Shown piece after piece: positions 2,771-63,777 of a DNA stretch of 64,000 nt. Made by a program: the position numbers and the translations under genes. This DNA comes from Macrostomum lignano (taxonomy: Eukaryota). The stretch lies in the NCBI GenBank assembly GCA_002269645.1, contig NIVC01000100.1, forward strand, positions 62,001 through 126,000. Direction: 5' to 3'. Positions within the stretch are counted from its first letter, which is position 1. Every line of letters begins with the position of its first letter. The notes below the pieces were generated by a model, which did no database searches, had not been told where the DNA came from, and worked only from the letters and a program-made list of their open reading frames with translations.

Positions 2771-5700
2771 CTATTCATCCTTGTTTCTGCCGCGCTGTTT
2801 CCGTCGCGCCGCCCGCCGCGTCACGGCGTCCAAACCGGCGCCGAACCTTTTTGCGGCCAAGCCGGCAAAAGCGGCATTCAAGCCGGAGAAAGCTGCCAAC
2901 GCTAGCCAAGATGTGGCCAACCAGAATATCGATGTCGCCACAAAGACTAGCCAAGCTATTAAAAAAATAATTAGCCAAATTCGACAGGCAAAAGTAGGCG
3001 AGCAAGCCTCGGTTGGCTCTAGGCTTTGATCTCCGCTAGCCAGATCCGAAGATTGATAAATGTTATTACAAAGACTTAAGTCTTTGTCGCGCCACAATTT
3101 TCGTAACCAATCGGCTGCTCGTCCGGCGTCCATCGGCACCGAGCTAGCCGGATGTCGGCGAACTCGCCACGCGATGCCGGCTGGAAGTTGACCGCGCAGA
3201 AATTTCAGCTCGCTACTCGGCGGCGGAGACGAATTGGTATCGATGAAGTCTTGCGTCAGATCGTACACGGCGTCTAGGCGGTCTGCGATGCCAGGTTAAG
3301 CAGGTTTGACTGCGGTTAGTACAAGCCTATAGGTTAAATATGTGGTAGTTTCAGAGTACATGTACAAGGTACCCTCACAGCTGATTCGGCGCCACTTTCA
3401 CAGAAGAGTTGGCGCCAACTTCACAACAGAGTTGGCGCCACCTTCAACAGCATATTTGGCGCCACCTCTAACAGAAGATTTGGCGCCACCCCCAACAGCA
3501 GATTTGGCGCACACTTAACAGCAGATTTGGCGCCACCCCTAACAGAAGATTTGGCGCCACTTTCACAGCTGATTCGGCGCCACCCTCAGCAGCAGATTCG
3601 GCGCCATCCTCACAACAGATATGGAAGCAGCTGTTGAGATACCATCTTAATCCCAATCCCTCACTGTCAGTTATTTATACTAAGTCAAAGCTATACACAT
3701 ATACATGTACCTCCTAGTTGCTGTCGCAGATGCACGAAGCCAAGGGTTCGCGGCTGAAGTACCCGCTTTAAAGGCGCCAGGCCCTCTTTCTCGGCGTAAG
3801 CGTCGCTTTGAGCTTTCGTCTGTGGCGTAAAATTCGTGCCCTCTGGGAAGATTAGAATCTGTAAATTTGGCGAAGAAACAACTTTTCTGCATTCTCTACT
3901 CTTGTTTTTCACTTTCGTTCTTCTCTTAAACTACTTCAGCGCTGACTTATTCATTTAACTTCTACTGCTGTCTTGTCTACTCTACTACTGTCTTGTCTAC
4001 TCTACTACTGTCTTGTCTACTCTACTACTGTCTTGTCTACTCTACTACTGTCTTGTCTACTCTACTACTGTCTTGTCTACTCTACTACTGTCTTGTCTAC
4101 TCTACTACTGTCTTGTCTACTCTACTACTGTCTTGTCTACTCTACTACTGTCTTGTCTACTCTACTACTGTCTTGTCTACTCTACTACTGTCTTGTCTAC
4201 TCTACTACTGTCTTGTCTACTCTACTACTGTCTTGTCTACTCTACTACTGTCTTGTCTACTCTACTACTGTCTTGTCTACTCTACTACTGTCTTGTCTAC
4301 TCTACTACTGTCTTGTCTACTCTACTACTGTCTTGTCTACTCTACTACTGTCTTGTCTACTCTACTACTGTCTTGTCTACTCTACTACTGTCTTGTCTAC
4401 TCTACTACTGTCTTGTCTACTCTACTACTGTCTTGTCTACTCTACTACTGTCTTGTCTACTCTACTACTGTATTGTCTACTCTACTACTGTCTTGTCTAC
4501 TCTACTACTGTCTTGTCTACTCTACTACTGTCTTGTCTACTCTACTACTGTCTTGTCTACTCTACTACTGTCTTGTCTACTCTACTACTGTCTTGTCTAC
4601 TCTACTACTGTCTTGTCTACTCTACTACTGTCTTGTCTACTCTACTACTGTCTTGTCTACTCTACTACTGTCTTGTCTACTCTACTACTGTCTTGTCTAC
4701 TCTACTACTGTCTTGCCTACTCTACCGCTGTCTTGTCTACTCTACTACTGTCTTGCCTACTCTACTACTGTCTTGTCTACTCTACTACTGTCTTGTCTAC
4801 TCTACTACTGTCTTGTCTACTCTACTACTGTCTTGTCTACTCTACTACTGTCTTGCCTACTCTACTACTGTCTTGTCTACTCTACCGCTGTCTTGTCTAC
4901 TCTACTACTGGCTTGTCTACTCTACTACTGTCTTGTCTACTCTACTACTGTCTTGTCTACTCTACTACTGTCTTGTCTACTCTACTACTGTCTTGTCTAC
5001 TCTACCGCTGTCTTGTCTACTCTAGTACTGTCTTGTCTACTCTACCGCTGTCTTGTCTACTCTACTACTGTCTTGTCTACTCTACTACTGTCTTGTCTAC
5101 TCTACCGCTGTCCTGCCTACTCTGCTATTGCAATGTCTGCTCCACCGCTGTCTTTTCTATCTTGCCACTAATTTGTCCACTCTGCTACTGTCGTATCTAC
5201 TCTACCTACTCTACCCTTGTGTACTTTTAACGTAACAGTTTAAGGTATATACTTTACCAGTCTAACAGATGTAATCTACCCACGTCAATCTCATTTACCC
5301 CTGACCAGCTCTTGGACGAATTTATCTCATCCAAAACTGACATAATTTAATTATCAAATGTGCCACAATTTCACCTACCGAATTCAACGCACCTGAGTTT
5401 TACAGCCAACGATATTAAAATAATCAACGCATTCCGTAATGTAAGGCTGGTCATGGTCCCAGGCCCGATGCAGAAACATGTAGTGCGCTGCCTGCATGGC
5501 CCAGCCAGGGCCTGGCAAATTCTTCAACTCGTGTTTCATTATAATCTTCAACGTAGATAGGCAGCCAAATCGCATTAACAAATACCAGATGTACATCCAG
5601 TCCAATCGACTTGGATGATTCATAATTATGATTGCACAATCGCGTTTATCGATTGAATCGCCATAGTGACGAAACTTTAAGCCAAGGAAGAGTTCCATTA

Positions 5701-8680: not shown

Positions 8681-9805
<1,125 letters not shown>

Positions 9806-12221: not shown

Positions 12222-18952
<6,731 letters not shown>

Positions 18953-28900: not shown

Positions 28901-31900
28901 GCAAGTCAATCATGGAGCATCATCTAAGATACCTTCTTGGTGCCTCATTACTAACTTTGGCGCAACATTTCACATGTTAGCGCCTCATCTCTTATTTGGC
29001 ACCTAATTTCTCATCTTGGCGCCTTATCTCTCATCTTGGCGCCTTATCTCTCATCTTGGCGCCTTATCTCTCATCTTCGAGCCTCATTTCTCATCTTGGC
29101 GCCTTATCTCTCATCTTGGCGCCTTATCTCTCATCTTCGAGCCTCATTTCTCATCTTGGCGCCTTATCTCTCATCTTGGCGCCTCATCTCTCATCTTCGA
29201 GCCTCATCTCTCATCTTGGCGTCCTATGTCTCATCTTGGCGTCTTATCTCTCATCTTGGCGTCTTATCTCTCATCTTGGCGCGTCTCATCTCTCATCTTG
29301 GCGTCTCATCTCTCATCTTGGCGTCTCATCTCTCATCTTGGCACCGATCATCTCTCATTTTGGCACCGATCATCTTTCATCTTGGCGCTTCATCTCTCAT
29401 CTTGGCGTCTCATCTCTCATCTTGGCACCGATCATCCCTCATCTTGGCGTCTCATCTCTCATCTTGGCACCGATCATCTCTCATCTTGGCACCGATCATC
29501 TCTCATCTTGGCACCGATCATCTCTCATCTTGGCACCGATCATCTCTCATCTTGGCACCGATCATCTCTCATCTTGGCACCGATCATCTCTCATCTTGGC
29601 ACCGATCATCTCTCATCTTGGCGTCTCATCTCTCATCTTGGCGTCTCATCTCTCATCTTGGCACCGATCATCTCTCATTTTGGCACCGATCATCTTTCAT
29701 CTTGGCGCTTCATCTCTCATCTTGGCGTCTCATCTCTCATCTTGGCACCGATCATCTCTCATCTTGGCACCGATCATCTCTCATCTTGGCACCGATCATC
29801 TCTCATCTTGGCACCGATCATCTCTCATCTTGGCACCGATCATCTCTCATCTTGGCACCGATCATCTCTCATCTTGGCGCTTCATCTCTCATCTTGGCAC
29901 CGATCATCTTTCATCTTGGCACCGATCATCTCTCATCTTGGCACCGATCATCTTTCATCTTGGCACCGATCATCTTTCATCTTGGCACCGATCATCTTTC
30001 ATCTTGGCGCTTCATCTCTCATCTTGGCACCTCATCTCTTATCTTGGCGCCTCATCTCTCATCTTGGCGCCTCATCTCTCATCTTGGTACCGATCATCTT
30101 TCATCTTGGCGCCTCATCTCTCATCTTGGCACCGATCATCTCTCATCTTGGCACCGATCATCTCTCATCTTGGCACCGATCATCTCTCATCTTGGCACCG
30201 ATCATCTCTCATCTTGGCGCTTCATCTCTCATCTTGGCACCGATCATCTTTCATCTTGGCACCGATCATCTCTCATCTTGGCACCGATCATCTTTCATCT
30301 TGGCACCGATCATCTTTCATCTTGGCACCGATCATCTTTCATCTTGGCGCTTCATCTCTCATCTTGGCACCTCATCTCTTATCTTGGCGCCTCATCTCTC
30401 ATCTTGGCGCCTCATCTCTCATCTTGGCACCGATCATCTTTCATCTTGGCGCCTCATCTCTCATTTTTACTTAATTTCGCACCACGACGATTTCTGATTA
30501 ATATTGGAACCTAATTTCTCATCAATGCGCTTCATCTCATACCACGGCGCCTCATAACATCTGGTGTGTCATTATCATTGGGCGCCTTATATCTGTCATT
30601 GTGATTTACTATCGCAAAAAAATTGGCGCAATAAAACCCAATCGGCACTACTCGCAACATACAATGCAGCACATGTCCAAGCACCATCATTGGCAGCATC
30701 GCTCACCTGCAGTTGCACAGCCTCTATAGACACCTGCTAGGCCAAGAGCTTAGCATGGATAGTCGAATTGTTGAACGAGACAGCGCGCCAGTCTACGGAC
30801 CATGTCTGGTTCAATTTCCCGCCATGGCTGACCAACCAGATCTGATGGATCTTATTCGGGTGAGATAACAACATCCTTGTCGTGAGCTGCTGGAGGGGTA
30901 GAAATTGAGTCATACTATATTATACTACGTACATAGTCGCAATCTGATTGGCTGCTGAGGGATAGAAAAACCTATAACGATACAGGGTCGGATTCTGATT
31001 GGCTGCTGAGGGTTAGAAAAACCTATAACGATACAGGGTCGGATTCTGATTGGCTGCTGAGGGATAGAAAAACCTATAACGATACAGGGTCGGATTCTGA
31101 TTGGCTGCTAAGAGATAGAAAGTAATTACTGCTAAACTACGATCAAATGGTAAGGAACTTATTTTCACTTCATTTTAGCGTCGGTGGAACGAATTCGCAA
31201 AACGCGATCGAGCTTTTAGAGTAAGACAATGAAGCTTAATTGAATGATTGGGTTTTTCTCTAAATTGTAAATATTTTGACTTGAATTTCAGAACTTTAAC
31301 AAAAAAACAAACTAATCTTTTTATCCAGAAACCAATAGCCACAGAGACAATGAAGCTGGAGTTTAGCCGCATTGTTAAGTCGACCTATTTTCTTAATCAG
31401 GTCAAGGATTTTCAGCCCTACGTGTTTGGCAACAAGGCGCAGGAGCAGGTAGGTTACTGACGTAATTTACCCGTCAGACACTCATCACACACCTGTTAGA
31501 CATTCATCACACACCTGTTAAACCAGTCATGACACACCTGTCAGACAGTCATCACACACCTGTCAGACAGTCATCACACACCTGTCAGACAATCATCACA
31601 CACCTGTTAGACATTCATCACACACCTGTTAAACCAGTCATGACACACCTGTTAGACATTCATCACACACCTATTAAACCAGTCATGACACACCTGTTAG
31701 ACATTCATCACACACCTATTAAACCAGTCATGACACACCTGTTAGACATTAATCACACACCTGTTTAACCAGTCAGGAAACACCTGTTAGACAGAATCCC
31801 CAGTTTAATTAATCCCATCATAACAAAATCCCAAATCCCTCAGACCCGAGCAAATCTTATCCAGGATTTCCAACGCCGGACAGCCACGGATCCCAGTGGA

Positions 31901-32804: not shown

Positions 32805-33491
32805 TCACTGAGCAATCTGCTCAATAACCCAGTCGGGATTGGCGCAGAAGGTGAACCTATTGTCTACTGGCGTGCCCTCAACGAATCGAGCGTAGGTCAA
32901 CCGCACGTTGCCGACCTCCTTGGAGTTCTCGTAGAACTCGAAGTGATTCGGCTCTACCTTGAAGAGCAGCATGGACTCTGGCGGCGGAATCTTGGAGTCC
33001 TTGTACTGGGCCAGCTTGTGCCTCAGCTCCTGGAATTTCTCCTTGAACTCTGAGTCGATCACCTTGCTCTGGTTGGAGTCGATAGCGCTGAAGTAGCACT
33101 TCAGGTCTGGCGTGAACATCTTCTGGAAGTAGCTGTTGATCACGTGACGGTCTCTGATCATGGAAGTCTCGCCGGCCACGGTCACGTGACGGCCGATTGG
33201 CAGCCAATCAAAGTACAGGCAGACATTTTTATTCTGCGATATCTGGCTGCCCTTGCGGCTGTGCAGGGTGGACAGGAACAGAAAGGAGTTGTCGCAGACG
33301 TCGGCGAGCTGCATGGGCCGCTGCGATGGCGTCATGGACTGCGGGCAGGCCGTGGCGAGGACGAAGGTGTCGGCGTTGCCGAACTGCCCGCATCTGGCGG
33401 CGTCCTTCTGCCAGCGGCGGAACAGGTAGAACGGCTGCGAGAAGCCGCGGCTGATCGCGTCCTTCGGATCGCGGATGGGCTTTGTGTGCGG
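32805..33491 (-). CDS. PNPO-like: Divergent PNPO-like protein, copy 2 (inverted duplicate of 9119-9805; 5' end unresolved)
   Basis: 687 bp colinear with copy 1; by eye 7 substitutions (6 synonymous, 1 Cys>Tyr). Confidence 0.8.
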   Translation of the reverse strand, partial: PHTKPIRDPKDAISRGFSQPFYLFRRWQKDAARCGQFGNADTFVLATACPQSMTPSQRPMQLADVCDNSFLFLSTLHSRKGSQISQNKNVCLYFDWLPIGRHVTVAGETSMIRDRHVINSYFQKMFTPDLKCYFSAIDSNQSKVIDSEFKEKFQELRHKLAQYKDSKIPPPESMLLFKVEPNHFEFYENSKEVGNVRLTYARFVEGTPVDNRFTFCANPDWVIEQIAQ

Positions 33492-33900
33492 CAGCAAAGG
33501 GTGAAGCGGGTGCGGAGGGTGAAGCGGGTGCGGATGGTAAAGCGTGTGCGGAGGGTAAAGCGGCTGCGGAGGGTAAAGCGGGTGCAAATATTTGAAGCGG
33601 GTGAGAAGGGTAAGGCGGATGCGGAGGGTGAAGCGTGTGCGGAGGGTGAAGCGGGTGCGGAGGGTGAAGCGTGTGCGGAGGGTAAAGCGGGTGCGGAGGG
33701 TAAAGCGTGTGCGGAGGGTAAAGCGGGTGCGAAGGGTAAAGTGGGTGCGAAGATTTGAAGCGGGTGTGGAGGGTACATATAGATCGGGTGCAGTGGGTAG
33801 AGAAAATAACCTGTAAGGAGGGTAAAGCGGGTGTGGAGGGTATAATAGGAGAGGAGGGTGAAGCGGGTGGGGAGGGTAAAGTGGCGCAGAGGGTATAACA
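33492..33900 (-). repeat. 17/18-bp CCGCTTCACCCTCCGCAC array 5' of PNPO-like copy 2
   Basis: Same unit as 8681-9118 but a different unit order and number. Confidence 0.85.
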
Positions 33901-34640
33901 GGCTGAGGGTGAAGCAAGTGTCGAGTGTGGAGGGGGTAGGGAGCATGCTTGGGCGCAACCTTGGGATTCACTCGGCCGTTTCTATTGGCAACACACACAT
34001 GTAAGTCGCTATTGGACGGAATAGTAGTCTAGATATTTAGTAAATATCTAAGTTTTGTATGCTTGCTTGCTTGTAAACTGAAGATAAAAGACAAAGAATC
34101 ATACGATTAAAAATGCTTAGTAAACTTCCGATCGGCAGTGAATAGGTGCATGGGTATCTAAAGCTGCAAACTGGTTTTATTGACAATGTACAGAACCAGA
34201 ACGTACTTAGTCTTATCTAGTCGATCAGATCGATCTGGACAAAAGATCCCAGTACAGGAACAAAAAAGGAAATACCGCCATTAAAGAAATCGTGAAGAAA
34301 AATATTAAATTTTTAGAAATATTGCTGTAACAACGTTTTAATAGTAGTTTTTTTAAGAAAATCATTTTAATGGTAAACTTAGTTTTCACACTACTTTGTT
34401 TTACAGCAATCATCCCTATTTAATAATAATGTCAAGGACGACTTAAGTAGAAGGACGGGAAACCTCGTTTCTTAGAAAAGTTTTGAAGGCACTTTTTCCC
34501 GAAAAAATACACTACAAAGATAGGAAGTTTTCATTTTTTCAGCACAAAAATTGTTATTGCGTTTGATAGGAGGCAGATCCAGTGTTCATCTTTTGATATG
34601 TTGTGCCTTTTTTATTGCTCTATCGATATTTATAAAGCTT

Positions 34641-38944: not shown

Positions 38945-41900
38945 ATGAAGCTAACACAAGCAATGAGCGGCAGCTTAGCAGCCGACACTAACAATCCACA
39001 GGCTAAGACGCCTCAGTCATCAACATTTAAGCAACGTCGTTCAGCTGTCAATCAATCAAATCTCAACCTATCTGATTCTGTTAAAAAGTCGAAAAAACGC
39101 AATTCCATGGCTAAAGCTGGCCCAGTGCCAAAGATGAGCTACGCCATGGCTTTGAAACACATTGTTGGCCCGATGCCAAGGGGTGCAGTTGATTCTAATC
39201 AGCCGGACCCAGCTTGGCTACACCAGCGACAGAAACGGCCGCGCCAGCAGCAGCAGCCGCCTAGAAAGAAGGCTTCTCGCCGATCCAGCATTCGAGTTCG
39301 AGGACGCGGACTGAACGATGCAGCTCGAACTCCGGTTGCTATTCGTCAGGCTGGCGCAATGTCTACTGGCCATGCTCTGTCGCCTCCAACTTTGATTGTT
39401 GGCTCAAAGCAGCCGGCTAAGCAGCAGAAAAAGCAGAAGCCATCAATAGTTGCTAGGGAACCTAACGCTACCCCTACTGATGCCGCTGGTACTAATACTA
39501 CTACTGCTAGTAGTAAAACACCGCCTCCACCAACTCCGGCTTCGATATTGAACAAAAAGAAACGAATGACTTGGGCTCAACAATTGCACTCGCCTGCGGC
39601 TAAGCCGCCTCAAAGCGATCCAGCCGAACCTCCGCCAAGTTCGGCGCTAAGAAAGTCAATCCTAGTTCGACGAGCAATGATGGGAGCCGCTGCGAAAGCT
39701 TCTAAGCAACGTGCCGATGACGAGCCTGATATTAATAAAAAGTCTCCCGTTGTTATTAAAGTTAATAAAACGCCGATTGCTACTGCTAGTAGTAATCAGT
39801 CTACAAGCTCGTCTGTTTCTATGCTAACTATGGCGCCAATTGTTGTTGCCAATACGCCAGAGAGAGCTGCTATGACTGCTGCCGGCAATGAGTCAACTGC
39901 ACCACCCGCTGATAATAAACGTCGACGTTCCTCGGTAGCGGCCGCAAAATCGTTGAGAAAGTCGAAATCTATTGGCAAGGTATTTTGAAGTATTATAAAT
40001 GCTCATCAGGTTTAGGAGCGGGAAGATAGTTTAGACACAGATGATCCCATCTTTAAAAAAGTACCTGCATAATTCTGCTTGAAGTTTAGTGCTTTATCAG
40101 TGGATCGCAACTGATTCCACTAAGATTTCATTTAGGAGCCTTTCAATCCAATCCTCAATTCAATACCCCTGAAACTTTCTAACAGTGAACAAAACCAAGA
40201 ATTCGGTGCTAGATTTACGATATTACCCCTAAGAGAATTCCCTCAGAGATTTGATATCCCTAAATAATTCCTCTCGATATATATTACTCATGAAAGAATT
40301 CCCTCCTTGTTTATTACTCCTAGAGAATTCCCTCCTTGTTTATTACTCCTAGAGGATTCCCTTCTTGTTTATTACTCATCGAGAATTCCCTCCTTGTTTA
40401 TTACTCATCGAGAATTCCCTCCTTGTTTATTACTCATCGAGAATTCCCTCCTTGTTTATTACTCATCGAGAATTCCCTCCTTGTTTATTACTCATCGAGA
40501 ATTCCCTCCTTGTTTATTACTCCTAGAGAATTAACTCCTTGTTTATTAGTTTTAGAGAATTCCCTCCTAGATATAATACTCCTAGATAATTCCCACCTAA
40601 ATTTATTACTCCTAGAAAATTCCCTCCTAGATTTATTACTCCTAGAGAATTCCCTCCTTGTTTATTAGTCTTAAAAAATGCCCGCCTATTTTATACTCCT
40701 AAAGAATTCCCTCCTTGTTTTTTTACTTTAGAGAGAATTCCCAAGAATTAATACCCCCTAGAAAATACCCTCCAAGATTTAATACCCCATAGAGGATTTT
40801 TTTGCGAGATTTACTGCTCCCTAAGAGTTTTTAGCGATTTATTACCCCAATAATTTCTCCTGATCTCGCAGGCCCAGCCGAAGATGACCTACGCCATGGC
40901 TTTGCAGCGCGTCGCCGGGCCAATGCCCCGCAGCGCTATGGCTTCCACCACCGCTGCCGTCAGAATTAGGACTAAGCAACATCAACAGCAAAAACGTCGC
41001 TCAAAGAAGCAGCAGTCTCAACAAGCCGGTAAACGGCCTGGGCCGCCCATGTCGACGCTAGAACAACCGACCGCCCCGCCGCCGGCTAAACTGCCTCGAC
41101 TGTCGGCGACCACGGCATCAACAGCAACAACTAACGATTCCGGAGCTGAGGAATCAGCGACTAAGCAGCAACGGCCAGTAGGAGGAGGTCCACGACGAGG
41201 CAGAACAACCGGCCTTTTGGCACGCTCGAAAAGTCTGGCGACTGGCGGACATCTGGCTGCTGCGGCTCACGCGTCTCGCCCTGCCGCTTTGGTTGTTTCG
41301 CATCTGCGTAAATCCGTTGATAGCGGGGTTAGTCAGGTGGTCGTTAAGACGCCACGGGACAAGACACCTGCCAGGACACCCCAAGACAGGACGCCTGCCA
41401 AGACACCCCGGGATAAGACGCCCGCCAAGACACCACGGGACAGGACGCCTGCCAAGACACCTGGCGAGAAGACGCCCGCCAAGACACCTGGCGAGAAGAC
41501 GCCCGCCAAGACACCTGGCGAGAAGACGCCCGCCAAGACACCTGGCGAAAAGACGCCCGCCAAGACACCTGGCGAGAAGACGCCCGCCAAGACACCTGGC
41601 GAGAAGACGCCCGCCAAGACACCTGGTGAGAAGGTGCCCGCCAAGACACCCCGGGACAAGACGCCCATCAAGACACCTGGTGAGAAGGTGCCCGCCAAGA
41701 CACCCCGGGACAAGACGCCCGCCAAGACACCTGGTGAGATGGCACCCCGGGACAAGACGCCCGCCAAGACACCTGGTGAGATGGCACCCCGGGACAAGAC
41801 GCCCGCCAAGACACCTGGTGAGATGGCACCCCGGGACAAGACGCCCGCCAAGACACCTGGTGAGATGGCACCCCGGGACAAGACGCCCGCCAAGACAACT

Positions 41901-44303
41901 GCAACTGGCGAGAAGACACCCCGGGACAAGACGCCCACCAGGGCACCTAGCGAGAAGACTAGCCGGGGCAAGACGCCCACCAGGGCACCTAGCGAGAAGA
42001 CTACCCGGGACAAGACGCCCGCAACAACACCTGCTGAGATGGCGCCCAGGGACAAGACACCTGCCAAGGTACCTGAGGAGAAGACCCCCGTCAAGACACC
42101 TAGTGAGAAGACACCCCGGGACAAGACGCCCGCCAAGACACCTAGCGAGAAGACACCCCGGGACAAGACGCCCGCCAAGACACCTGTCGAAAAGACGCCC
42201 GCCAAGACACCTGGAGAGAAGACACCCCGAGACAAGACGCCCGCCAAGACACCTGGCGAGAAGACACCCCGAGACAAGACGCCCGCTAAGACACCTGGCG
42301 AGAAGACACCCCGAGACAAGACGCCCGCTAAGACACCTGGCGAGAAGACACCCCGAGACAAGACGCCCGCTAAGACACCTGGCGAGAAGACACCCCAAGA
42401 CAAGACGCCCGCTAAGACACCTGGCGAGAAGACACCCCGAGACAAGACGTCCACAAAGACACCTGAGCACAATAATACGCTCTCCAAGTCGCAGTCTGCC
42501 AGCGCTAGTGAAGCAGTGGCAAACACAGCCCACACCCTCGCCGTCCCTGAAAAGCCGGCCAATCGTCAGGGACGAAGCCAAAAGCGCAAAGCGGCCAGAG
42601 ATGCAGAGAACTCGCCAGCCGATAAGCAGCATCAGCAACAACGAGTTGCTCCATCTTCAAACTCGTCGTCTCCTTTGAGACTGTGGAATCCGACTAATGA
42701 TCCCGTCGATGAAGTACCGCCTTCAACAAAGACTAAGACGAAGACCAGCAAGCAAAAAGCTAAAGTAGTTTCCGTCGCTAAGTCGGTTAAATCGACAAAA
42801 ACTCGCACGAACAGCAAGGCCATTGCTAAGGACGCTATTGATTCGGAATCTGAAGTTGTTGGCAAGGCCAATTCAACCGTCGTCAAGAAAAATTCGCGTC
42901 AAAAACGACCCGTCGGCAAGAAACCGATTGTCGAAGAGCCGGCTCAACCAGCGGTTGGCAATTCGACGCGTCAAGCCGCTACGGTTGCTACAGACGCTAT
43001 TTATAATTCTGCCGGTTCAAAGCATACCATTGCCATGGCAACCAACACGGCTCCAACTAAAAATAATTCGCGTCGTAAAGCGGTTGCTAAGCAACCGAGA
43101 GAGCCGGTTATTGCTGATGTCGAAGAGTCGATTGCTAAGGACGCAGTGGTTGCTAACGAAATCCAATCATCTGATACCGTCGCTACTAAAGCTAATACTA
43201 ATAAGCGTCTTCGCAAGCCAATAAGCACTGAAGACAAAACTTCTTTGGCTGAGGTTGCTAAGGACGCTACAAGGTCCAGTCGAGCCATTCCAGCGGCGGA
43301 ACTCGCTGCTCAGCCTGAAATCGTCGAGTCGGTCGTCGAAGACGCCCCGGTTGGTCGTCGAAAGCGACGGGCGGCAGCGCCATCTACGAAGACGGCGGCG
43401 TCGAAAAAGTCCCGCCGCAGCGCCGCTAAGACCAACGAGATTGCTGTAGAATCAAGGGAGACGATTGTTACTAAGGAGGTCGTTGTCAAGGAGACGGTTA
43501 CACGCGGCCGCGCCAAGCGAGCCATGGCTGTTGCAGACGATACCGAATCGCCGGCTAAGAAGCCGCGTCGCGGCGCAGCCAAAAAAGCAGAGGAAGCTCC
43601 AATTGATGCGGAAGCTCCTGTTGCTAAGAGGGCTCCAGTTGCTAAAAAAGCGGCTGCTACTAAGGTACCTCCTACGATCGAGAAAGCTCCTGTTACTGAG
43701 GAACCTTCCGTTGCTAAGAGGGCTCATGCCACACGTAGGGCGGTTGCTAAGGAAGCTCCTGTTGCTGGGGAAGCTTCCGTTGCTAAGAGGGCTCCTGCTA
43801 CAAGGAGGGCAGTGGCTGCTAAGGAAGCTGCTGTTGCTGTGGAAACTTCTATTGCTAAGAGAGCTCCGGCTACGCGAAGGGCGATGGTTGCTAAGGAAGC
43901 TTCTGTCACTAAGGTCAATACTGTTTCAAAGCAGTCTCCAGTTGCTAAAAATGTCACTACTGCCAAGAAAGCTGACGTTGCTAAGGAAGCTCCCGTCACT
44001 AAGAAAGCTGCTGTTGCTAAGGAAGCTCCCGTCACTAAGAAAGCTGTCGTTGCTAAGGAAGCCCCCGTCACTAAGAAAGCTGCCGTTGCTAAGGAAGCTC
44101 CCGTCACTAAGAAAGCTGCCGTTGCTAAGAAAGCCGCCGTCACCAAGAAAGCCGCCGTCACTAAGAAAGCCGCCGTCGCTAAGGAAGCTCCCGTTGCTAT
44201 GCCGGCTGTTCGGGCTAAACGAGCCGCTGCCAAAGTTGCAGAGGAGGCCATTATGGTTTCAGCTGAAGCTAGAGTGACGACCAAACGTGGCGATCGAAAA
44301 TAA
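38945..44303 (+). CDS. Large basic low-complexity protein (~1490 aa) with a KTP/TPAK repeat block and an H1-like AKKA/VAKEAPVTKK tail; no recognised ortholog
   Basis: Exons 38945-39979 (AAG|gtatt) and 40872-44303 (ctcgcag|GCC) join in phase 0. Long open frames with varied wobble bases. The start codon is uncertain (38945 or 38963, or an upstream exon). Confidence 0.75.
40220..40800. repeat. 29-bp minisatellite GAGAATTCCCTCCTTGTTTATTACTCATC
   Basis: Core array 40290-40540 with degenerate flanks, in intron 39980-40871. Confidence 0.9.
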
Positions 44304-46127
44304 ACGGCTACTAACAGTTACCATGGACGCGTTGAGTTGCTAAGGACACGACTATAATAGATAGCGTTCAATCTATTTATCTGTTATTATATGGCTAAGC
44401 GTATTTTTTATGTAACTATTATCTAAACGCTGTGCTCTTATTTATATTGGATGTTGTGAATAATTAATATATGCACGATACTTCAAATGCTTATATACGC
44501 TCGTACGTAATTAGCTAGGGTACCTATTAACTATGTGCGCTTAGTAGCCTCTCATTGTATTTAATAATTGTATTTATAGCTTTGCCAAAACTTGTAATCA
44601 AATGCTCTTATTTACATTTGTTCTTTATGTAGCATTTTAGCAAAGCAAAAAACACACAAGGTGCAAAAACTCATACTATTTTTTTATTTTTTTATTCAGC
44701 TCAATTATACTCGCTTGTCAGTCTCTCTCTCTTCCTAAGTCGGCATTTCTCTAGTTTATAATTTCAATTATTTACGTTTTTTCTAATCTAACAAACGATT
44801 TGCTCATATTTTTGCTATCAACTTTTTTACTGCCTTATAGTTTTATATTTATTTCTCTGCTAAAATAAGCTGTACCCTACTGATATAAGTAGTGTAGCTC
44901 GGTAGGATGGCAATCTTTAATAAGTGTAAGTTTCTTAAAGTAGTGATTTGCATTGTTCCTTGTTAGGTATTGAATTATTTTATTTTTATTTTTAACCACC
45001 GTCATACTATTTATAATCCTTCAAAATTACTAATACTGCTATTAGTAAGCCGTGCGTTGATTCCGTTTATATATATTAACTCATGTGGCAGCAGTTTATT
45101 ATTTTTTAAATATAGCATCAAAATAATTTTGTTACTTATGTATCAACTATTCATTGTTTAAGCATTCAAATATAAGTTGCAACTATCTAAAACAAAATTA
45201 TACTTTATTATTATTCAGCAGCTATATAGCTTATAATCCATTATTACAATTTTTCATTATTACTTTAGTGAATAAAAACTCAATGTCTGTAATCGATGAC
45301 GAGCTTATTTATTTCGATTGTTAATTATTATTGTTAGAATAGCGCGTGTAAATAAGATGATTAACAAGTTTAAATGATATTTAGCTAGCATTTGTAAGCG
45401 ATAATGAACACTTATTAGACATTAAAACTAATTTCAGTCAAATATATATATATATAAAGATACAAACTTTTCAAAAGGGCGTATTAAAAATATCAGTTTT
45501 TCATAATTTGGATTTAGAACGATTTACCCTAGGTACAGGTTTACTGTTATGAAGTTCTACCGCAAAACAATAGAAATTTAAGTGGAAAATCTCGAAATTT
45601 TGTAATGAAGAATTTAAAAAATCAATTTATTCGATGGAAACATCCCGGTTGCTAAGGCATCCGACTTCTCCGCTAAAAACCTAAAGTGACCCTTAATATA
45701 GGTTTTTGTTTTTTTTATAACAATAGCATTTGAAGTAAACCTTGTTGGTTTTTATGCATAGTTTATTATCGGAGTGAAAAAGATCCCAGTTGCACGCACG
45801 CGAACCACTCGCCTCAAGTTACAATATTGAGCATCGAGAATCTGCGGATTCCTCGCGAGCCTTGTCATCTTGTCCTCTCCATCTGGATGTCGCGGCTCCA
45901 CTGCTGCTGCTGCCTCGTCTAAAAAGTTAATAAAGGTTTCGCTTACTAGATTTTGTGGTCTTGATGATTTTGGCTTCGCAAGCACCCGCTACCTATAGTT
46001 TGAGCGACTTCAGCACTACAGGCGACACTTTCATACGATTTTCAAAACAAACAGTTCTAAAAACAACCTTGAAGCTTTAAAATTAAACTTAAATCACTGC
46101 TCGGGCGTTTTAGAAATTTCCCCTTAC

Positions 46128-49100
46128 TTACTGACTACTTTGACGACCAACAGACGCAGTCGACATGTCATGATAATGAGCCCGAGTTTTCTCCCATTTC
46201 AATAGCGATATATGCTCAGCGTGCAGGCCGTCAGATTGATCCGGCGAAGACAGTTCAGGCTTTACTCTGATTGACGATCGCTGCTTCAAACTGCTTGTTG
46301 CCGGTGGTGCCGGACTGTCCACGTGGTTCTGTTGCTTGTCTTGCACACTCGACGTTGCCGCCGGTTCGACAAAGTGTACGTGCAATGCGTCTTGATCTTT
46401 GGGCAAAACTGTCGGTTGGGCGTATGAGGAATCAACTGACGTTTCAGGTGCAGGTAGTGTCACTTCCGGTGATGGAAAAGACGATCGTTGGTCTTGTTCT
46501 CGTTGCTGTTGTTGCGCTTCCGGTTGCACATGCGTATGTGTTACAGGTCTCGGAGCTTCTGGTTGTACTCTTACAATATCCGGCTTAGAAACAGCAGGTA
46601 TTTCTTTTGGTTTCCCACCCAGCAGCAGTAGCAAATGCTTCATCTGCAGCTCCAGATTCGCCAGTTTCTGCCGCTGCTCGTAGATTTCAGTTTCCAATCG
46701 TTCGACGCCGAATGAAGCGTCGGATTCCAGTCGGGTTAATTGACCTTTCAGCTCGGTCTCCAAGCTATTGATGTGCTCTCGTAGGTCTCTGCAAACCTCC
46801 TCGCCGTTCTCCGCTATCTCGTTTTCCATGTGCGCTTTAAGAGCGTCAGCATCGCCTCGATGTCCTTCTACTGAGCGACGCAGTTGCGCTCGACACTGAC
46901 GCAGCTGCTCGGCCTGGTAGGTCAGGAAGCGGCGATACGCCGCCGGGTAGTTGGCGAATTTGGACTGGTTCTGCCACCAGACCGACTGCTGCTGCTTCTG
47001 AAATGTGATACCAAATTAAATGTACTGCAACGTTGTTACTTTTGAATTGATTTATGATGTCTATGACTGTATGGGTATTGGTTATATCCCAGCAAACTTG
47101 TTGGCAAATTGAAACTCAAAAAACGTCTCAATTAGCGTTACCTCGGCCTCTTCCTCAGTCGGCAGTCGGGGCACTTCCCGAAAGCACGGACACCTTCTGA
47201 GCAGCTTCCAGGCGTAGTACGGGAACGACAGCGGCGGCGGAATGGGACTGATCTCAGAGAATTCCTGCAACAGCTCGAATTGGTTCTTTCGCCACAGTCC
47301 GTTGGCTTTGGTGGCCATCTGACTAACCGTATACGTAAACAGCGCAATCAGAAGATTCCACATCACCAGATTGACAATTAGCAAATAGAAGAATATTAGA
47401 ATTCCATTGTAGGCATTGTTGCCGCCCAAATCTGCGCAACCAAGACCGGTTGCTTCCTTGCTCGAGTTGCACGAAGTAAATAGCGTGTTCTCAAACAGAC
47501 CGAACATAAGCGACACTGGCAAAGTGAATATCAGCGTCAAAGACTGTTCGTCTCTGGCGTCTGCGAAAGCTGGAAACAGCAGGTTGAAAAAGAACACGCC
47601 GAATGAGTAGATTAGAACAAACATTATTAGTACGAATGGTAGCAGGTCTTTGAATATCAAACTTTTCAGGATGCAAATTTTTGGTCCTGTGACTCGGAAA
47701 TAGCTTAGCAGTGCAACAAATCGAAAGCCGAGTAGTAAGAACGATGTGCTTAATACCACCTGGCAGCTGCGGTATAGTGAGGCATCGACCACTCGACCCA
47801 GCAGTTTTAAAACGACTCCAGCCCACATCAATGAAAAACCACTGATGTCGAAGTAGTTGAACAAATCTGTAAAATACAGCGGCACCCGCAATCGTTTATG
47901 TCTAATGTAAACGTCCATTATTGCGCTTTTATTAAGAATGTTATCCACTTCCTGTAGTGTTAATGACAGAGCGTAAGCCAGCAGGATGATATCAGCGGCT
48001 GGATGCTCTAGATTCCACTTGAAATCCGTCACGTACCAGGCAAAGTACGCGAGAAAGACGAGGTAGAAAGTCATGTAGATGCCGAACCGTTGTTGAATTG
48101 AAACTTTCGATCGCTTATTCAGCACATTGCACTGCACCTGGACGCCTTGATCCCAGGGCAGCGGGGGCGGCTTGCGCCACTGCCTGTCTACCAGCTGACT
48201 AATGCACTCAGTAGCGTATAGATCATCGCAGTCAAGCATCTCCACCATGTCCATCACGGACATGAAATTTCGATTTTCATTTTTGTTTCGCTCTTCAAGC
48301 CGTTTCGCTTGTCTGGAGTGTCGCTTGTGCTTTCTGATCGCCTTGCCCTCCGCCTCCAGCTCGTCATCGTCGCTGTCGGTCTCCTCAGCGTCGTCATCCG
48401 CTATCATAGGCACCGGCCCCGGAAACTTCGGTCCTAATACGTTCTTCTCGTCCGTAAAGTTTGCCGTTAGGTACTTGAACAGTAGTCTTCTCTCGGTAGC
48501 GTGTGCGTTAACGCATAGATTCTCGAGAACATTTACTACTACATTTAGCGCCTTGTCTCGAACTCTTTTCAACTGTTCGTTCCTCATCAGCTCAACTTTC
48601 GGTCTCAGGTGAATAAGCAGTCGCAGAGTCTCTGGTATGATGTCGAATTGAGGCAGAAGCATCAAATCCGACAGTAGCTTCGGTTTTTCAAAGAAAATAG
48701 CGCATTCGATCAGCGTCAAATGCTCAACAAAGTCCTCCGAGAGCATTCGGAATTTTTCCAGATCTTTAAAGCTTCTCCGCTGTTGTGCCTCCGATTCGTC
48801 CTCTTTTCGCATCAGGATGTAGTTGATCACCTGGTCGCGCATGTCCTCGGCTGCGAATCCGGCTACAATTAGGCTGCGCAGCATCTGGCTCGAGTCGAGC
48901 TCCAGAGCTCGGTAGAGAATCAGCACCTCGGGAGCCTCGCTTGGCGAAGCCTGATTCCCAGCCGTATCGACCATTCGTCTTGAACTGTGATTCCTCTCAA
49001 TGTTGGTGCGTAGACTCAGGTCGGAAAACAGGTTGAGCAGATTTCTAGCACTCTGTCGGTCCGGCAGAGGTAAAGCTCGTCTTGTCGGATCCACTAGGCG

Positions 49101-52100
49101 AAGTATTTCGCTAAGATCGACACCAGAACTGACGGCCACTTCGCACAGGGTCGGCAGTTTGCCGCTCTGGCAGGCATAATCGACGCAGGTCTGATTGGAC
49201 GTCGTGTAGTCTTCGAGCTTGAGACCCTGGCTGAGTAAATAGCTAATATTCTCTTTGTGACCCGCTTCGCATGCAAAGTGCAGACTGGTGGCACCTTTCA
49301 TCGGACCTTCGTTGACTCCAATTGACAACAGCTGGGGCAAACTTAGATCACACAATTGACAGAGCGGCGTCTGCAGATTCATGATGCTGTACCGACTGCA
49401 AAACACGTGAATCGCGTGCAATCCATTGGAGTTTCTCTGCAACTTGCTAAATGCCTTCTTTAATTCCGGTTGGGAAATTCGCTTGAGAATCGATTTTAAA
49501 TTGTTTTCATCCAGTTCGGATGCGAGAAGGCAATTTCTCATCGCTTTGTTTTCGGAAGTGAAGTCGACCCCGGCTTTGATCAGCTGCTCAGCTACATCTG
49601 CCAACTGCCCAACGGAGAAGCTGAATCGCACTCGAGGATCCAATACAAGAAACAGAGCGTGCAGCAGAGTGTTGCCGTCCTTGTCGATGCACTGGTGTTC
49701 ATCAAGATCAATATAGCGGGCGTGAAAGAAGTTAAAGTTCTTAGCCAAACAGGCAATAAACAGCGGGTTTCTGCCGTCTTTGTCAACCATCTTTAATGCG
49801 TCGAATTTGTCCGATTTACCAAACAGCGGATAGATCCGCTCGAACATAGGCACCCCATGAGCTCGATTCAGCGTGCACACGTGCAGGCAGGTTCTGCCAT
49901 CGTCGTCTGTTGATTTGAGCACTTCCAGAATCGCTGCCGAGTCCTTGACATTATCAAATAAGTAGGCTAGCATGCCTTCGGATCTTTCATTGCGAGCTGC
50001 GTAATGTGCGCAGGTCCGGTTCCGATAGCCGCGAAGTGTAAGCGCCGCGTTGCCAACCTTGTTCACCAGTTTGGCCACCGTGCTGACGTCCTGCTTCAGC
50101 AGTGCAATATGCAACGCCGTCGCTTCGTCGGTGTCGCGGCAGAGAAACAGGCTTGGATCGTGATTGGCTACTAGCCATAGCAGCGCCGCTGGCGAGCGTT
50201 CATTATCCGCTGCGTAGTGCGCAATAGTGCGTCTGTACTTACCACCAGGAAGGCTGAGGCACTCCAGACCGAGCTTCTCTAATAACAGCTCGGCAACTTT
50301 GTCGTTTTGCTTTAAGAAAGCGAAATGAACGGGGGTGTCGCCATTATTGTCGGGCACCGTGAACGCGTGCATGTCCAGGTTGTCAATTAGCCACAGTATG
50401 GCGCTTGGACTTCGTTCGTTGAGGGCTGCATAGTGAACTGCGGTGCGTCCTTTGAAGCCTTTTAATGCTAGACAGTCGGTTCCGAGTATTCCAACCAGGC
50501 GTTGAACTGTGTCGACAGTTTGCACCTTGAATGCATAGTGCATAGCGGTGCTAGTCCTCTCTATCGAGGTCAAAAAAATCTCGGGCTCCAGAGTATCCAG
50601 CAGCCAATAGAACGCGCTAGGACTGCGCTCGTTCAGCGCCGCAAAGTGCGCCGCCGTCTGCTTGTTGTCGATTTGTGACCTGAGTCGGCCCCAGCCAGCC
50701 TTAGACACCAGCCTGGCTACAACTTCGGCGGTCTGGTTCCTGAAGGCCCAATGAAGCGGAGTGGTTTCTTCGGCGTCTACGGCGTGAAACAAATGCGATT
50801 CGTGGTTCTCAATCAGATACAGCAGGGCACTGGCGCTGCGCTCGTTAAGAGCAGCGTAGTGAGCCGCTGTGCGCTTGTATTTGCCGCCGGGCAGCTTCAG
50901 ACAGCCTCTGCCCAGTTTTTCTATTAAGGCTATCGCCACGTGAGCGTCTTGCTTCCAGAATGCCTGGTGAAAGGCGCAATCGCCCTGAGCATCGGGAGTT
51001 AAGAGTATCGATTGGTCCTGAGTTTCGATTATCCAAAGCAGGGCGCTTGAGCTCCGTTCGTTCAGAGCAGCATAGTGAGCCGCCGTGCGACCTCGTTCAC
51101 CTCTTTGCTTCAGACAGTCGATGCCCAGCGAGCTAACCAACTCATTGATAGTCTTTCCGCACTGTTTCCAAAAGGCCAGATGGATAGCCGTGTCTCCGTT
51201 TCCGTCGGCGTTGCAGAACATGTCCGACTGTTGATTCTCGAGCAGCCACAGTAGCGGGCCGTGGTTTCTCTCGTTGAGCGTGGCGTAGTGCACCGCAGTG
51301 CGTCCGTTTTCGCCTTGTAGACTGAGACAATCGAAGCCTAGCTTGTCAACTAGGGCCTTGACAGCCGACGCGTCCTGCTTCCAGAAGGCCAGATGAACCG
51401 GGGTGTCGCCGTTGGCGTCCGGCATCAGAAAGTCGTCCGGATTTTCCTGGGTATCAATCAGCCACATCAGGGCCTCGGAGTTGTCCTCGTTCATGGCGAC
51501 CATGTGGAAAGCTGTCTTGTTGGCCTCGCCTTTCACTCTCAGATAGCGACCATTGTCTCTCTCAGCAAGCACCTGCAGAGTTCTCGTGTCCTGAATAGCG
51601 AACACGTATTGTAGGGCGGTGAAATTTTCGTCGTCAGCATCGTCTATGAAGTCACGCTGTTCGAGCCGGTCGAGCAGCCAAAACAGAGCAGCTGGACTGT
51701 TCCGATTCCAGGCTGCGCAGTGCAAAGCCTTGCGACTTTTGCAGCCTTCCAATCGTAGGCAATCGATGCCGAGGTGCTCCACCATCAGCTCTAGGGCGGC
51801 TGGACCAGTTAGAACACCCTGTAAGCGAGCGGCGATGTGTACGATGGTGTCATTCTCTGGGTTTCTAACGGACAGGCAGTCGGCACCGAGGCGGGTCAGC
51901 AGGAACCGCAGCACTGTGAGATCCTCATCTTTGGCTGCTGTCAGAACCGCATGAGTCACCTCTGGATCGCATTTTATTGTCGCAGTCTGTAAACCCGACC
52001 GAATTTTATCGCATAAGCTATTTTGAGTATTCTCATCCTTCGATTGGACGGCCTGGAGTAGCTTGTCATACAATCGCATGCCGGCCTTTGTCACGTGATT

Positions 52101-52112
52101 TCCAACTTCCGT
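46128..52112 (-). CDS. TRP cation channel with ~25 N-terminal ankyrin repeats and a TRPM-type transmembrane/TRP-box/coiled-coil C-terminal half (~1950 aa)
   Basis: Exon 52112-47142 (catttag|ACG...GAG|gtaacg; first ATG at 52079) and exon 46997-46128, phase 0. Ankyrin TAxHxAA/TPxHxA motifs; six TM segments; GPKICILKSLIFKDLLPF; pore LMFGLFE with CNSSKEATGLGC; NLLIALFTYTV...LWRKNQFELLQEF...PIPPPLS; C-terminal coiled coil. Confidence 0.88.

Positions 52113-58666: not shown

Positions 58667-63777
<5,111 letters not shown>

What the first reader, a model, noticed from the sequence alone, without database searches (positions are those of the whole stretch)
46128..52112. Chimeric TRP channel: NOMPC-length ankyrin array on a TRPM-type pore
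Seen: ~900 N-terminal aa form roughly 25 ankyrin repeats, including 8 highly similar ~70-aa double units (RTAxHYAALNERS...DTPxHxAFxKQ). These are followed by a pre-S1 segment (MDMVEMLDCDDLYATECISQLVDRQW), S4-S5 GPKI...KDLLPF, a pore with a two-Cys loop, NLLIALFTYT, a TRP box followed by PIPPP, and a C-terminal coiled coil. Known: those channel features are TRPM signatures, and canonical TRPMs have MHR/SLOG N-termini rather than ankyrin repeats; long ankyrin arrays typify TRPA and TRPN, where they act as a gating spring in NOMPC. Inference: a domain-shuffled ANK-TRPM channel that may have converged on tethered mechanosensation or a new ligand-sensing mode.
Basis: partly seen in the sequence, partly recalled or inferred. 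Interest (0 to 1): 0.82.

Follow-up and report, generated by a model that had tools for sequence, protein, structure and literature searches.

The report
Flatworm TRPM-like channel with 25 ankyrin repeats
This is an intact Macrostomum lignano gene for a TRPM-type cation channel whose usual N-terminal SLOG domain is replaced by about 25 ankyrin repeats. That layout is already published for the schistosome drug target TRPM_MCLZ, but here the repeat array is about four times longer and the gene belongs to a large, undescribed family expansion.

Summary
On the minus strand, one 1,670-codon ORF encodes about 24-25 ankyrin repeats, a helical linker and an S1-S6/TRP-helix channel. A 144-nt intron joins it to a coiled-coil exon. 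With a third small exon the CDS reproduces PAA90912.1 (BOX15_Mlig023275g1, "hypothetical protein", 1,967 aa) exactly.

The channel half is TRPM-type. The top 60 PDB sequence hits and the top 50 Foldseek hits are all TRPM. The Ca2+-site residues of the voltage-sensor-like domain are conserved. No SLOG domain is present.

It is not a one-off chimera. Flatworms have a published ankyrin-bearing, SLOG-less "TRPM-like" group that includes Sm.TRPM_MCLZ, the meclonazepam target. The window's linker matches that group's MHR3/4 region (hhalign 91-95%) but not the canonical TRPM region directly.

The window gene sits in a divergent clade of at least 19 clusters. Every member whose source was looked up is from M. 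lignano. Several members have N-termini of about 1,200 aa. The array grew by duplication of a 71-aa two-repeat unit.

Transmembrane-based affiliation with TRPM_MCLZ is only moderate (NJ bootstrap 0.67; HMM scores neutral). NOMPC-like mechanosensation remains untested speculation.

Verdict: a new variant of a known kind, of moderate interest.

The parts
47142..52079 (-). Exon 1 (aa 1-1646): ankyrin array, linker, S1-S6, TRP helix
   Evidence: Single ORF. ATG at 52079 and donor GAG|gtaacg at 47142/47141. The three-exon CDS equals P0005 exactly.
49140..51965 (-). Ankyrin-repeat array, about 24-25 repeats (aa ~39-980)
   Evidence: Pfam Ank_2 6.8e-60. Self-profile finds 19 repeats between aa 80 and 772. 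Further repeats identified by eye. Coordinates checked.
50025..51524 (-). Core of seven tandem two-repeat (about 71 aa) units (aa 186-685)
   Evidence: Pairwise identity 38-58%, mean 44%. No residual DNA tandem repeat.
48270..49091 (-). Helical linker (aa 997-1270), a degenerate MHR3/4-like region with a disordered acidic/basic insert
   Evidence: hhalign against the MHR3/4 of ankyrin-type TRPM-like channels: 95.5%, E 1.6e-8. Without pre-S1: 91.4%, E 9.3e-7. Helical in AlphaFold2, with the insert at low pLDDT.
47190..48269 (-). Pre-S1, S1-S4 voltage-sensor-like domain, S5-pore-S6, TRP helix (aa 1271-1630)
   Evidence: PDB phmmer hits are all TRPM. AlphaFold2 pLDDT is mostly 75-94. Foldseek hits are TRPM. 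Candidate Ca2+-site residues E1377, N1380, N1408, D1411 and E1606 are conserved.
46998..47141 (-). Intron 1 (144 nt, phase 0)
   Evidence: gtaacg...tttcag boundaries.
46132..46997 (-). Exon 2: post-TRP helices, about 46-residue coiled-coil-type helix, low-complexity Q/P/S-rich tail
   Evidence: In-frame junction. AlphaFold2 helices at model residues 765-786, 795-840 and 847-864. If intron 2 is retained, the frame stops at TAA 46130-46128.
45919..46131 (-). Intron 2 (213 nt) as used in the deposited gene model
   Evidence: Donor CA|GTAAGT and acceptor tttttag|A.
45819..45918 (-).
   Evidence: The tail of P0005 maps here. Sequence shown. CDS check.

Best explanation
**What it is**

The locus is an intact three-exon gene of Macrostomum lignano: BOX15_Mlig023275g1, PAA90912.1, so far annotated only as a 'hypothetical protein'. 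It encodes a 1,967-aa subunit of a tetrameric TRPM-type cation channel.

**Shown**
- The S1-S6/TRP-helix module is TRPM-like in both sequence and predicted fold.
- It keeps the TRPM Ca2+-site residues of the voltage-sensor-like domain, the two pore-loop cysteines and long C-terminal helices.
- The SLOG/MHR1-2 domain that defines canonical TRPMs is absent. About 24-25 ankyrin repeats take its place.
- The segment between the repeats and pre-S1 is a degenerate remnant of MHR3/4.
- The gene belongs to a strongly supported, divergent clade of at least 19 50%-identity clusters. Every member whose source was looked up is from M. lignano.

**Inferred**
- This clade is an offshoot of the flatworm-specific, ankyrin-bearing 'TRPM-like' group. 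That group's characterised member, Sm.TRPM_MCLZ, is a ligand-gated cation channel.
- The array grew from a short one of about six repeats. It grew by repeated tandem duplication of a 71-aa two-repeat unit.
- The protein works as a Ca2+-dependent, probably ligand- or stimulus-gated non-selective cation channel.
- The ankyrin array serves as a cytoplasmic scaffold, partner-binding or regulatory module that replaces the nucleotide-sensing SLOG module.
- The natural stimulus is unknown.
For: **Gene model**
- establish the three-exon model. It translates exactly to P0005.
- One search gives the species and accession.

**TRPM-type channel half**
- PDB phmmer: best hit is the Nematostella TRPM2-like chain 6co7 at 1.2e-19, and all 60 listed hits are TRPM.
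- AlphaFold2 with a 28-sequence alignment: pLDDT 77.9, pTM 0.75.
- Foldseek: all top 50 are TRPM3/4/5/8/2, E 2e-13 to 2e-11, about 720-960 aligned columns.
- Candidate Ca2+-site positions are near-invariant across 27 relatives. They are E1377, N1380 (N/D/E/Q among relatives), N1408, D1411 (D/E) and E1606.

**Architecture**
- No SLOG domain.
- Ankyrin array.
- An exhaustive HMMER search found about 32 whole-profile relatives, then a tier with ANK + PF25508 'TRPM2-like domain' + Ion_trans and no SLOG, then canonical SLOG TRPMs.
- P0220 is 1,380 aa with H946 and Y1038, matching the published Sm.TRPM_MCLZ (PMC10788528).

**Link to the TRPM-like group**
- Linker homology to the ankyrin-type MHR3/4 region.
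- NJ tree: window clade bootstrap 0.945, or 0.995 with three further M. lignano proteins. The split between all ankyrin-type channels and canonical TRPMs has bootstrap 0.67.
- The gene has three exons, as reported for Smp_333650.
Against: - Affiliation with the TRPM_MCLZ group is not secure on the transmembrane region. NJ support is only 0.67, on a long branch and with no outgroup.
- Window-family transmembrane regions score about equally, and on average 5.7 bits lower, against an ankyrin-type HMM than against a canonical-TRPM HMM.
- BLASTP identity to TRPM_MCLZ is 24%, no better than to canonical TRPMs.
- Pfam does not detect PF25508 or Ion_trans in the window protein itself.
- No Pfam TRPM_tetra match supports the coiled coil.
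- There is no expression or functional data. The N-terminal half could not be modelled.
- The S4 histidine required for meclonazepam activation is an alanine here, read from the alignment. Pharmacology cannot be transferred.
Confidence: 0.72

Rival explanations
1. Convergent tethered mechanosensor. The roughly 25-repeat array acts as a NOMPC-like spring linking the channel to the cytoskeleton, and force gates the TRPM-type pore.
For: - Array length of about 24-25 repeats approaches NOMPC's 29.
- Several paralogues keep N-termini of about 1,200 aa.
- The best PDB hit of the array is NOMPC 5vkq at 5.7e-26.
Against: - The NOMPC hit is the sum of six weak stretches, the best 31.7 bits at roughly 20-25% identity by inspection. 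It mainly reflects NOMPC's own array length.
- The family is large and N-terminal length varies from about 750 to 1,270 aa.
- Some copies lack ankyrin repeats altogether (P0003).
- The closest characterised relative is ligand-gated.
- No localisation or physiology is available.
- Whether M. lignano has a true TRPN was not tested.
Confidence: 0.12
2. Independent origin. The Macrostomum clade gained, or ancestrally retained, its ankyrin array separately from the TRPM_MCLZ group, and is a distinct lineage beside TRPM.
For: - The transmembrane region shows no HMM preference for the TRPM_MCLZ group.
- The window clade is a long isolated branch, and the midpoint root falls on it.
- PF25508 is undetectable in the window protein.
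- Himmel et al. infer loss of ankyrin repeats before the TRPM-TRPS split. An early-branching retainer is therefore conceivable.
Against: - The linker profile matches the ankyrin-type MHR3/4 region (91-95%) but not the canonical one.
- One window-family member, P0016, is picked up directly by the MHR3/4 profile.
- All ankyrin-bearing relatives whose source was looked up come from flatworms.
- M. lignano also carries clear ANK+MHR3/4 intermediates.
- A single replacement of SLOG by ankyrin repeats is more parsimonious.
Confidence: 0.13
3. Artefact or dead gene: an assembly or annotation fusion of an ankyrin gene with a channel gene, or a pseudogene.
For: - M. lignano gene models for this family are often fragmentary or fused.
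- No transcript evidence was examined here.
Against: - Repeats, linker and channel lie in one 5-kb uninterrupted ORF.
- A near-identical second genomic copy exists (P0154).
- Many paralogues share the same domain order.
- Functional residues are conserved.
Confidence: 0.03

Closest known systems
Sm.TRPM_MCLZ (Smp_333650) and the flatworm 'TRPM-like' clade (PMC10788528, PMC11731825, PMC12861061)
   Same: - N-terminal ankyrin repeats instead of SLOG/MHR1-2.
- An MHR3/4-type linker with a shared RQFDxxP motif.
- TRPM-type S1-S6 and TRP helix followed by a PPP stretch.
- No C-terminal enzyme domain.
- A three-exon gene.
- Known only from flatworms.
   Different: - About 24-25 repeats against about six in P0220, counted by eye.
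- 1,967 aa against 1,380 aa.
- Only 24% identity in the transmembrane region.
- The linker is too degenerate for Pfam PF25508.
- The S4 histidine needed for meclonazepam activation is an alanine here.
- The window gene belongs to a separate, strongly supported clade in which every looked-up member is from M. lignano.
- Transmembrane-based grouping with TRPM_MCLZ is only moderately supported.
Canonical TRPM channels (TRPM2/4/5/8/3)
   Same: - Sequence and predicted fold of the channel module.
- GPKI S4-S5 motif.
- Pore-loop cysteine pair.
- Ca2+-site residues in S2, S3 and the TRP helix.
- Long C-terminal helices.
   Different: - No SLOG/MHR1-2 domain.
- A long ankyrin array is present.
- MHR3/4 is recognisable only through intermediate profiles.
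- No NUDT9H or kinase domain.
NOMPC / TRPN
   Same: A very long N-terminal ankyrin array (about 25 against 29 repeats), followed by a helical linker and a six-transmembrane TRP channel.
   Different: - The channel module is TRPM-type. 5vkq is not among the 60 best transmembrane hits or the 50 best fold hits.
- Similarity between the repeat arrays is generic.

Membership tests
TRPM (canonical melastatin family) | TRPM-type S1-S6 plus TRP helix | tested here: met
   PDB phmmer top 60 are all TRPM, best 1.2e-19. Foldseek top 50 are all TRPM. The nearest hits outside the ankyrin-bearing relatives in the 1.84-billion-protein search carry SLOG.
TRPM (canonical melastatin family) | N-terminal SLOG / MHR1-2 domain (Pfam LSDAT_euk) | tested here: not met
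   No LSDAT_euk hit. A SLOG profile iterated from P0068 hits 59 relatives but no member of the window family.
TRPM (canonical melastatin family) | MHR3/4 (Pfam PF25508 'TRPM2-like domain') | tested here: inconclusive
   No direct Pfam hit, and hhalign against canonical MHR3/4 is not significant. A transitive link exists through ankyrin-type channels: 95.5%, then 99.9%. Paralogue P0016 is hit directly. Most Foldseek alignments exceed the model's 865 residues in column count, so they are likely to extend into the linker.
TRPM (canonical melastatin family) | Absence of ankyrin repeats (Himmel et al. 2020) | tested here: not met
   Ank_2 at 6.8e-60. About 24-25 repeats.
TRPM (canonical melastatin family) | C-terminal tetramerising coiled coil (Pfam TRPM_tetra) | tested here: inconclusive
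   No TRPM_tetra hit at E<=10. AlphaFold2 predicts a 46-residue helix plus flanking helices after the TRP region.
Flatworm 'TRPM-like' group (TRPM_MCLZ clade) | Ankyrin N-terminus without SLOG on a TRPM-type channel | tested here: met
   Published architecture.
Flatworm 'TRPM-like' group (TRPM_MCLZ clade) | Linker homologous to that group's MHR3/4 | tested here: met
   hhalign 95.5%, E 1.6e-8. With pre-S1 removed: 91.4%, E 9.3e-7.
Flatworm 'TRPM-like' group (TRPM_MCLZ clade) | Transmembrane region clusters with TRPM_MCLZ rather than canonical TRPM | tested here: inconclusive
   The NJ bipartition has bootstrap 0.67, with no outgroup. HMM scores show no preference, with a mean of 5.7 bits lower against the ankyrin-type model.
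Flatworm 'TRPM-like' group (TRPM_MCLZ clade) | Meclonazepam-pocket S4 histidine (H946 in Sm.TRPM_MCLZ); defines the orthologue, not the group | tested here: not met
   In the BLASTP alignment, H946 faces an alanine in the RFVA segment.
TRPN / NOMPC | TRPN-type channel module | tested here: not met
   5vkq is absent from the 60 best sequence hits and the 50 best fold hits of the channel half.
TRPN / NOMPC | About 29 ankyrin repeats forming a spring tethered to microtubules | not testable with these tools
   The repeat number is comparable. The only N-terminal model was unusable, at pLDDT 43. Tethering needs experiments.
TRPA | TRPA-type channel module | tested here: not met
   No TRPA1 chain appears among the best channel-half hits. 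TRPA1 matches only the repeat array.
TRPS (soromelastatin) | SLOG-bearing, ankyrin-free sister family of TRPM | not tested
   No labelled TRPS sequences were available for a tree. The architecture (ankyrin repeats present, no SLOG) does not fit the published description.

The most novel reading that the evidence does not exclude
In a free-living flatworm, a lineage-specific radiation of TRPM-like channels independently evolved NOMPC-length ankyrin arrays. These arrays would work as force-transmitting or length-tuned gating springs on a melastatin-type pore. That would be a second, convergent origin of tethered TRP mechanotransduction. The naturally varying repeat number among paralogues would provide a built-in test series.
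Probability: 0.1. Interest if true: 0.8.

Novelty: new variant of a known kind. Interest (0 to 1): 0.42.

Why it matters
Textbooks and phylogenetic surveys state that TRPM is the one TRP family without ankyrin repeats (Himmel et al. 2020). Flatworm parasitologists have recently shown an exception in the drug target TRPM_MCLZ.

This locus shows that the exception goes much further in a free-living, genetically tractable flatworm:
- There are dozens of paralogues.
- The arrays reach about 25 repeats.
- The MHR3/4 linker is caught in the act of degenerating.

Three things follow:
- It gives a natural series for asking what the cytoplasmic N-terminal module contributes to TRPM gating.
- It shows how repeat arrays expand, through two-repeat unit duplication.
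- It offers free-living models for a channel group that is an anthelmintic target.

Tried and rejected
- **AlphaFold2 of the N-terminal 1,028 aa without an alignment.** It gave pLDDT 43 and was unusable. The repeat count therefore rests on sequence profiles.
- **Generic ankyrin profiles.** A profile built from recalled consensus repeats was too insensitive. A profile iterated from the window's own repeats was too specific. Neither could count repeats in paralogues.
- **Tandem Repeats Finder on the DNA.** It found nothing in the gene.
- **Word-indexed protein searches.** They returned only 4, 24 and 6 hits. The family picture comes from the exhaustive HMMER search.
- **A 71-sequence alignment.** The tool failed, so a 28-sequence alignment was used instead.
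- **Supplementary FASTA of PMC12861061.** It is not held, so no labelled TRPA, TRPC or TRPN outgroups were available and no rooted tree was made.
- **NOMPC as donor of the ankyrin array.** NOMPC is the array's top PDB hit. I rejected this as evidence because the score is a sum of six weak stretches.
- **Opisthorchis P0034 as a long-ankyrin orthologue.** It turned out to be a TRPM_MCLZ-type gene model with two tandem channel modules.
- **PF23317.** This precomputed Pfam accession is shared by window-family and TRPM_MCLZ proteins, but could not be identified in the local Pfam copy.
- **Literature search for Mlig023275.** No papers were found.

Full report
**1. What is in the sequence**

On the minus strand, one ORF of 1,670 codons (47082..52094) is followed by a 233-codon ORF (46128..46829). 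A canonical donor (GAG|gtaacg, last exon base 47142) and acceptor (tttcag|AAG, first exon base 46997) join them in frame. The intron is 144 nt and phase 0.

The frame is open from 52112, and the first ATG is at 52079. The database protein P0005 is identical to this product. It continues through a second donor (CA|GTAAGT, 46132/46131) into a 100-nt exon at 45918..45819. Concatenating the three exons reproduces P0005 exactly, at 1,967 aa.

P0005 is PAA90912.1, 'hypothetical protein BOX15_Mlig023275g1' of Macrostomum lignano. A near-identical second genomic copy (g2) exists. The window is therefore flatworm DNA, and the gene is annotated but uncharacterised. A full-text search for the gene identifier found no paper.

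**2. The N-terminal half**

- Pfam sees only ankyrin families (Ank_2 6.8e-60, eight stretches).
- A profile built from the protein's own repeats finds 19 repeats between aa 80 and 772.
- About five further repeats are visible at about aa 44 and about 775-985. The total is about 24-25.
- Residues 191-690 are seven tandem units of about 71 aa, two repeats each. They share 38-58% identity (mean 44%) and have more diverged units on both sides.
- Nothing repeats at the DNA level, so the duplications are old.
- An AlphaFold2 run without an alignment was useless (pLDDT 43).

**3. The channel half**

A 502-aa query running from pre-S1 to the coiled coil hits only TRPM chains among the 60 best PDB sequences. 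These range from the Nematostella TRPM2-like chain 6co7 (1.2e-19), through TRPM2, 8, 5, 4, 3 and 1, to TRPM7 (5e-5). The alignments run from S1 to beyond the TRP helix.

AlphaFold2 with a 28-sequence alignment gave a confident model (pLDDT 77.9, pTM 0.75). It shows six transmembrane helices, a pore helix, a continuous S6-TRP helix and long C-terminal helices. Foldseek against the PDB returned TRPM4, 3, 8, 5 and 2 for all 50 listed hits (E 2e-13 to 2e-11, about 720-960 aligned columns). NOMPC, TRPA1, TRPC and TRPV are absent from both lists.

I recall the five residues that bind Ca2+ in the voltage-sensor-like domain of TRPM2, 4, 5 and 8. I mapped them through the alignment. Their counterparts here are E1377, N1380, N1408, D1411 and E1606, and they are nearly invariant in 27 relatives. 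The pore-loop cysteine pair is present here but only in some paralogues.

**4. Relatives**

An exhaustive HMMER search of 1.84 billion representative proteins used a profile of the linker plus channel. It found 1,332 hits, in three tiers.

- **Tier 1.** About 32 representatives match the whole profile, linker included. Those looked up are all M. lignano. Several have N-termini of about 1,100-1,270 aa with strong ankyrin scores. Some are shorter, and one tandemly duplicated copy has no ankyrin repeats at all.
- **Tier 2.** These proteins have ankyrin repeats, Pfam PF25508 ('TRPM2-like domain', that is MHR3/4) and Ion_trans, without SLOG. They come from M. lignano, cestodes and trematodes.
- **Tier 3.** These are canonical TRPMs with SLOG and MHR3/4 and no ankyrin repeats.

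One tier-2 cluster, P0220 from Schistosoma, is 1,380 aa with H946 and Y1038. This matches the published Sm.TRPM_MCLZ.

**5. What is already known**

Himmel et al. [quoted passage not shown] Flatworm pharmacology papers nevertheless describe Sm.TRPM_MCLZ (Smp_333650), the target of meclonazepam. They report that it has 1,380 aa and three exons. They also report that it lacks MHR1/2-SLOG and carries N-terminal ankyrin-like repeats instead. A 2026 paper proposes calling this clade 'TRPM-like'.

**6. How the window gene relates to that group**

In favour of a shared origin:
- The window-family linker profile matches the MHR3/4 profile of ankyrin-type channels. The values are 95.5% and E 1.6e-8, or 91.4% and E 9.3e-7 with pre-S1 removed. 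Both share an RQFDxIPa motif.
- The ankyrin-type MHR3/4 profile in turn matches canonical MHR3/4 at 99.9%. The window linker does not match the canonical profile directly.
- One family member, P0016, is picked up directly by the MHR3/4 profile.
- Both are three-exon genes, and all ankyrin-bearing relatives whose source was looked up are from flatworms.

A neighbour-joining tree of 144 channel regions (278 columns, 200 bootstraps) gives:
- the window clade at 0.945, or 0.995 with three more M. lignano proteins;
- the TRPM_MCLZ clade at 1.0;
- the M. lignano ANK+MHR3/4 group at 1.0;
- the split between all ankyrin-type channels and the remaining 89 tips at 0.67. Those tips are SLOG-bearing TRPMs plus fragments in which no ankyrin repeat was detected.

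Against a shared origin:
- The tree has no outgroup, and the window clade is a long branch.
- Window-family channel regions score no better against an ankyrin-type HMM than against a canonical-TRPM HMM (mean 5.7 bits lower).
- Identity to TRPM_MCLZ is 24%.

I therefore treat common origin with the TRPM-like group as the best-supported reading (about 0.7). I do not treat it as settled.

**7. Mechanism**

Shown:
- The protein is a TRPM-type pore-forming subunit.
- It has conserved Ca2+-site residues and C-terminal helices suited to tetramer assembly.
- It has lost the SLOG module and has a very long ankyrin solenoid in its place.

Inferred:
- It forms a Ca2+-dependent, non-selective cation channel gated by an unknown stimulus.
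- The array is a scaffold, partner-binding or regulatory module.
- The array grew by two-repeat unit duplication from a short ancestral array of about six repeats.

The mechanosensory 'gating spring' idea is not excluded, but it has no support beyond repeat number. The array's best PDB hit is NOMPC (5.7e-26). That score is the sum of six weak stretches, the best 31.7 bits, and mainly reflects NOMPC's own array length. The size and length variability of the family argue for sensor diversification.

The S4 histidine needed for meclonazepam action is an alanine here. Drug sensitivity should not be assumed.

**8. Verdict**

The gene is a new, extreme variant of a known kind: flatworm ankyrin-bearing TRPM-like channels. 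It is not a categorically new chimera. Interest is moderate (0.42).

The most novel reading still open is convergent tethered mechanotransduction. I give it about 0.1 probability.

Noticed in passing
window 1-64000, e.g. 3961-5210, 15888-17198, 28983-30464, 60336-61266: The window is packed with long minisatellite arrays. Tandem Repeats Finder gives 46 rows with score >=200, with periods of 17-40 bp and up to 70 copies. Many of them create spurious ORFs in three frames.
   Followed up: partly
window 8681-9805 (+) and 32805-33998 (-): A PNPOx-like ORF (Pfam PNPOx_N ~5e-10) occurs as an inverted duplicate. The C-terminal ~230 aa are identical, and each copy is preceded by an 18-bp repeat array. 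This suggests a recent inverted segmental duplication about 24 kb apart.
   Followed up: partly
window 40884-44303 (+): A 1,139-codon ORF lies next to the channel gene. It is made largely of KTPAKTPGE/KTPRD and AKKAAVTKK repeats and has no Pfam match. Its function is unknown.
   Followed up: partly
window 59529-60293 (+): An ORF with BTB (2.4e-31) and BACK (1e-33) domains, probably an exon of a Kelch-like gene.
   Followed up: no
P0034 / P0165 (Opisthorchis viverrini): These gene models contain two complete linker-plus-channel modules in tandem behind one ankyrin region. They are probably the mutually exclusive exons 3a/3b of TRPM_MCLZ mentioned in PMC12861061, merged by the gene predictor.
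   Followed up: partly
L001 2477-4795 and 10001-11896 (M. lignano NIVC01000217.1): A tandemly duplicated family member (P0003) starts in the linker and has no ankyrin repeats. One copy runs into a GRHRK minisatellite.
   Followed up: partly
P0068 (Clonorchis sinensis): This is a canonical SLOG+MHR3/4 TRPM with an extra N-terminal ankyrin match (Ank_2 1e-7). It sits among canonical TRPMs in the tree. Ankyrin repeats and SLOG can therefore coexist in a flatworm TRPM.
   Followed up: partly
Precomputed Pfam column for P0001, P0006, P0065, P0220 and others: Accession PF23317.2 is listed for both window-family and TRPM_MCLZ-clade proteins. It is absent from the local Pfam copy, so its identity could not be established.
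   Followed up: no
Literature: PMC12424676: A planarian gene annotated 'nompc' is expressed in ciliated sensory neurons. I did not check whether it is a true TRPN or an ankyrin-rich TRPM-like channel named after its best BLAST hit.
   Followed up: no
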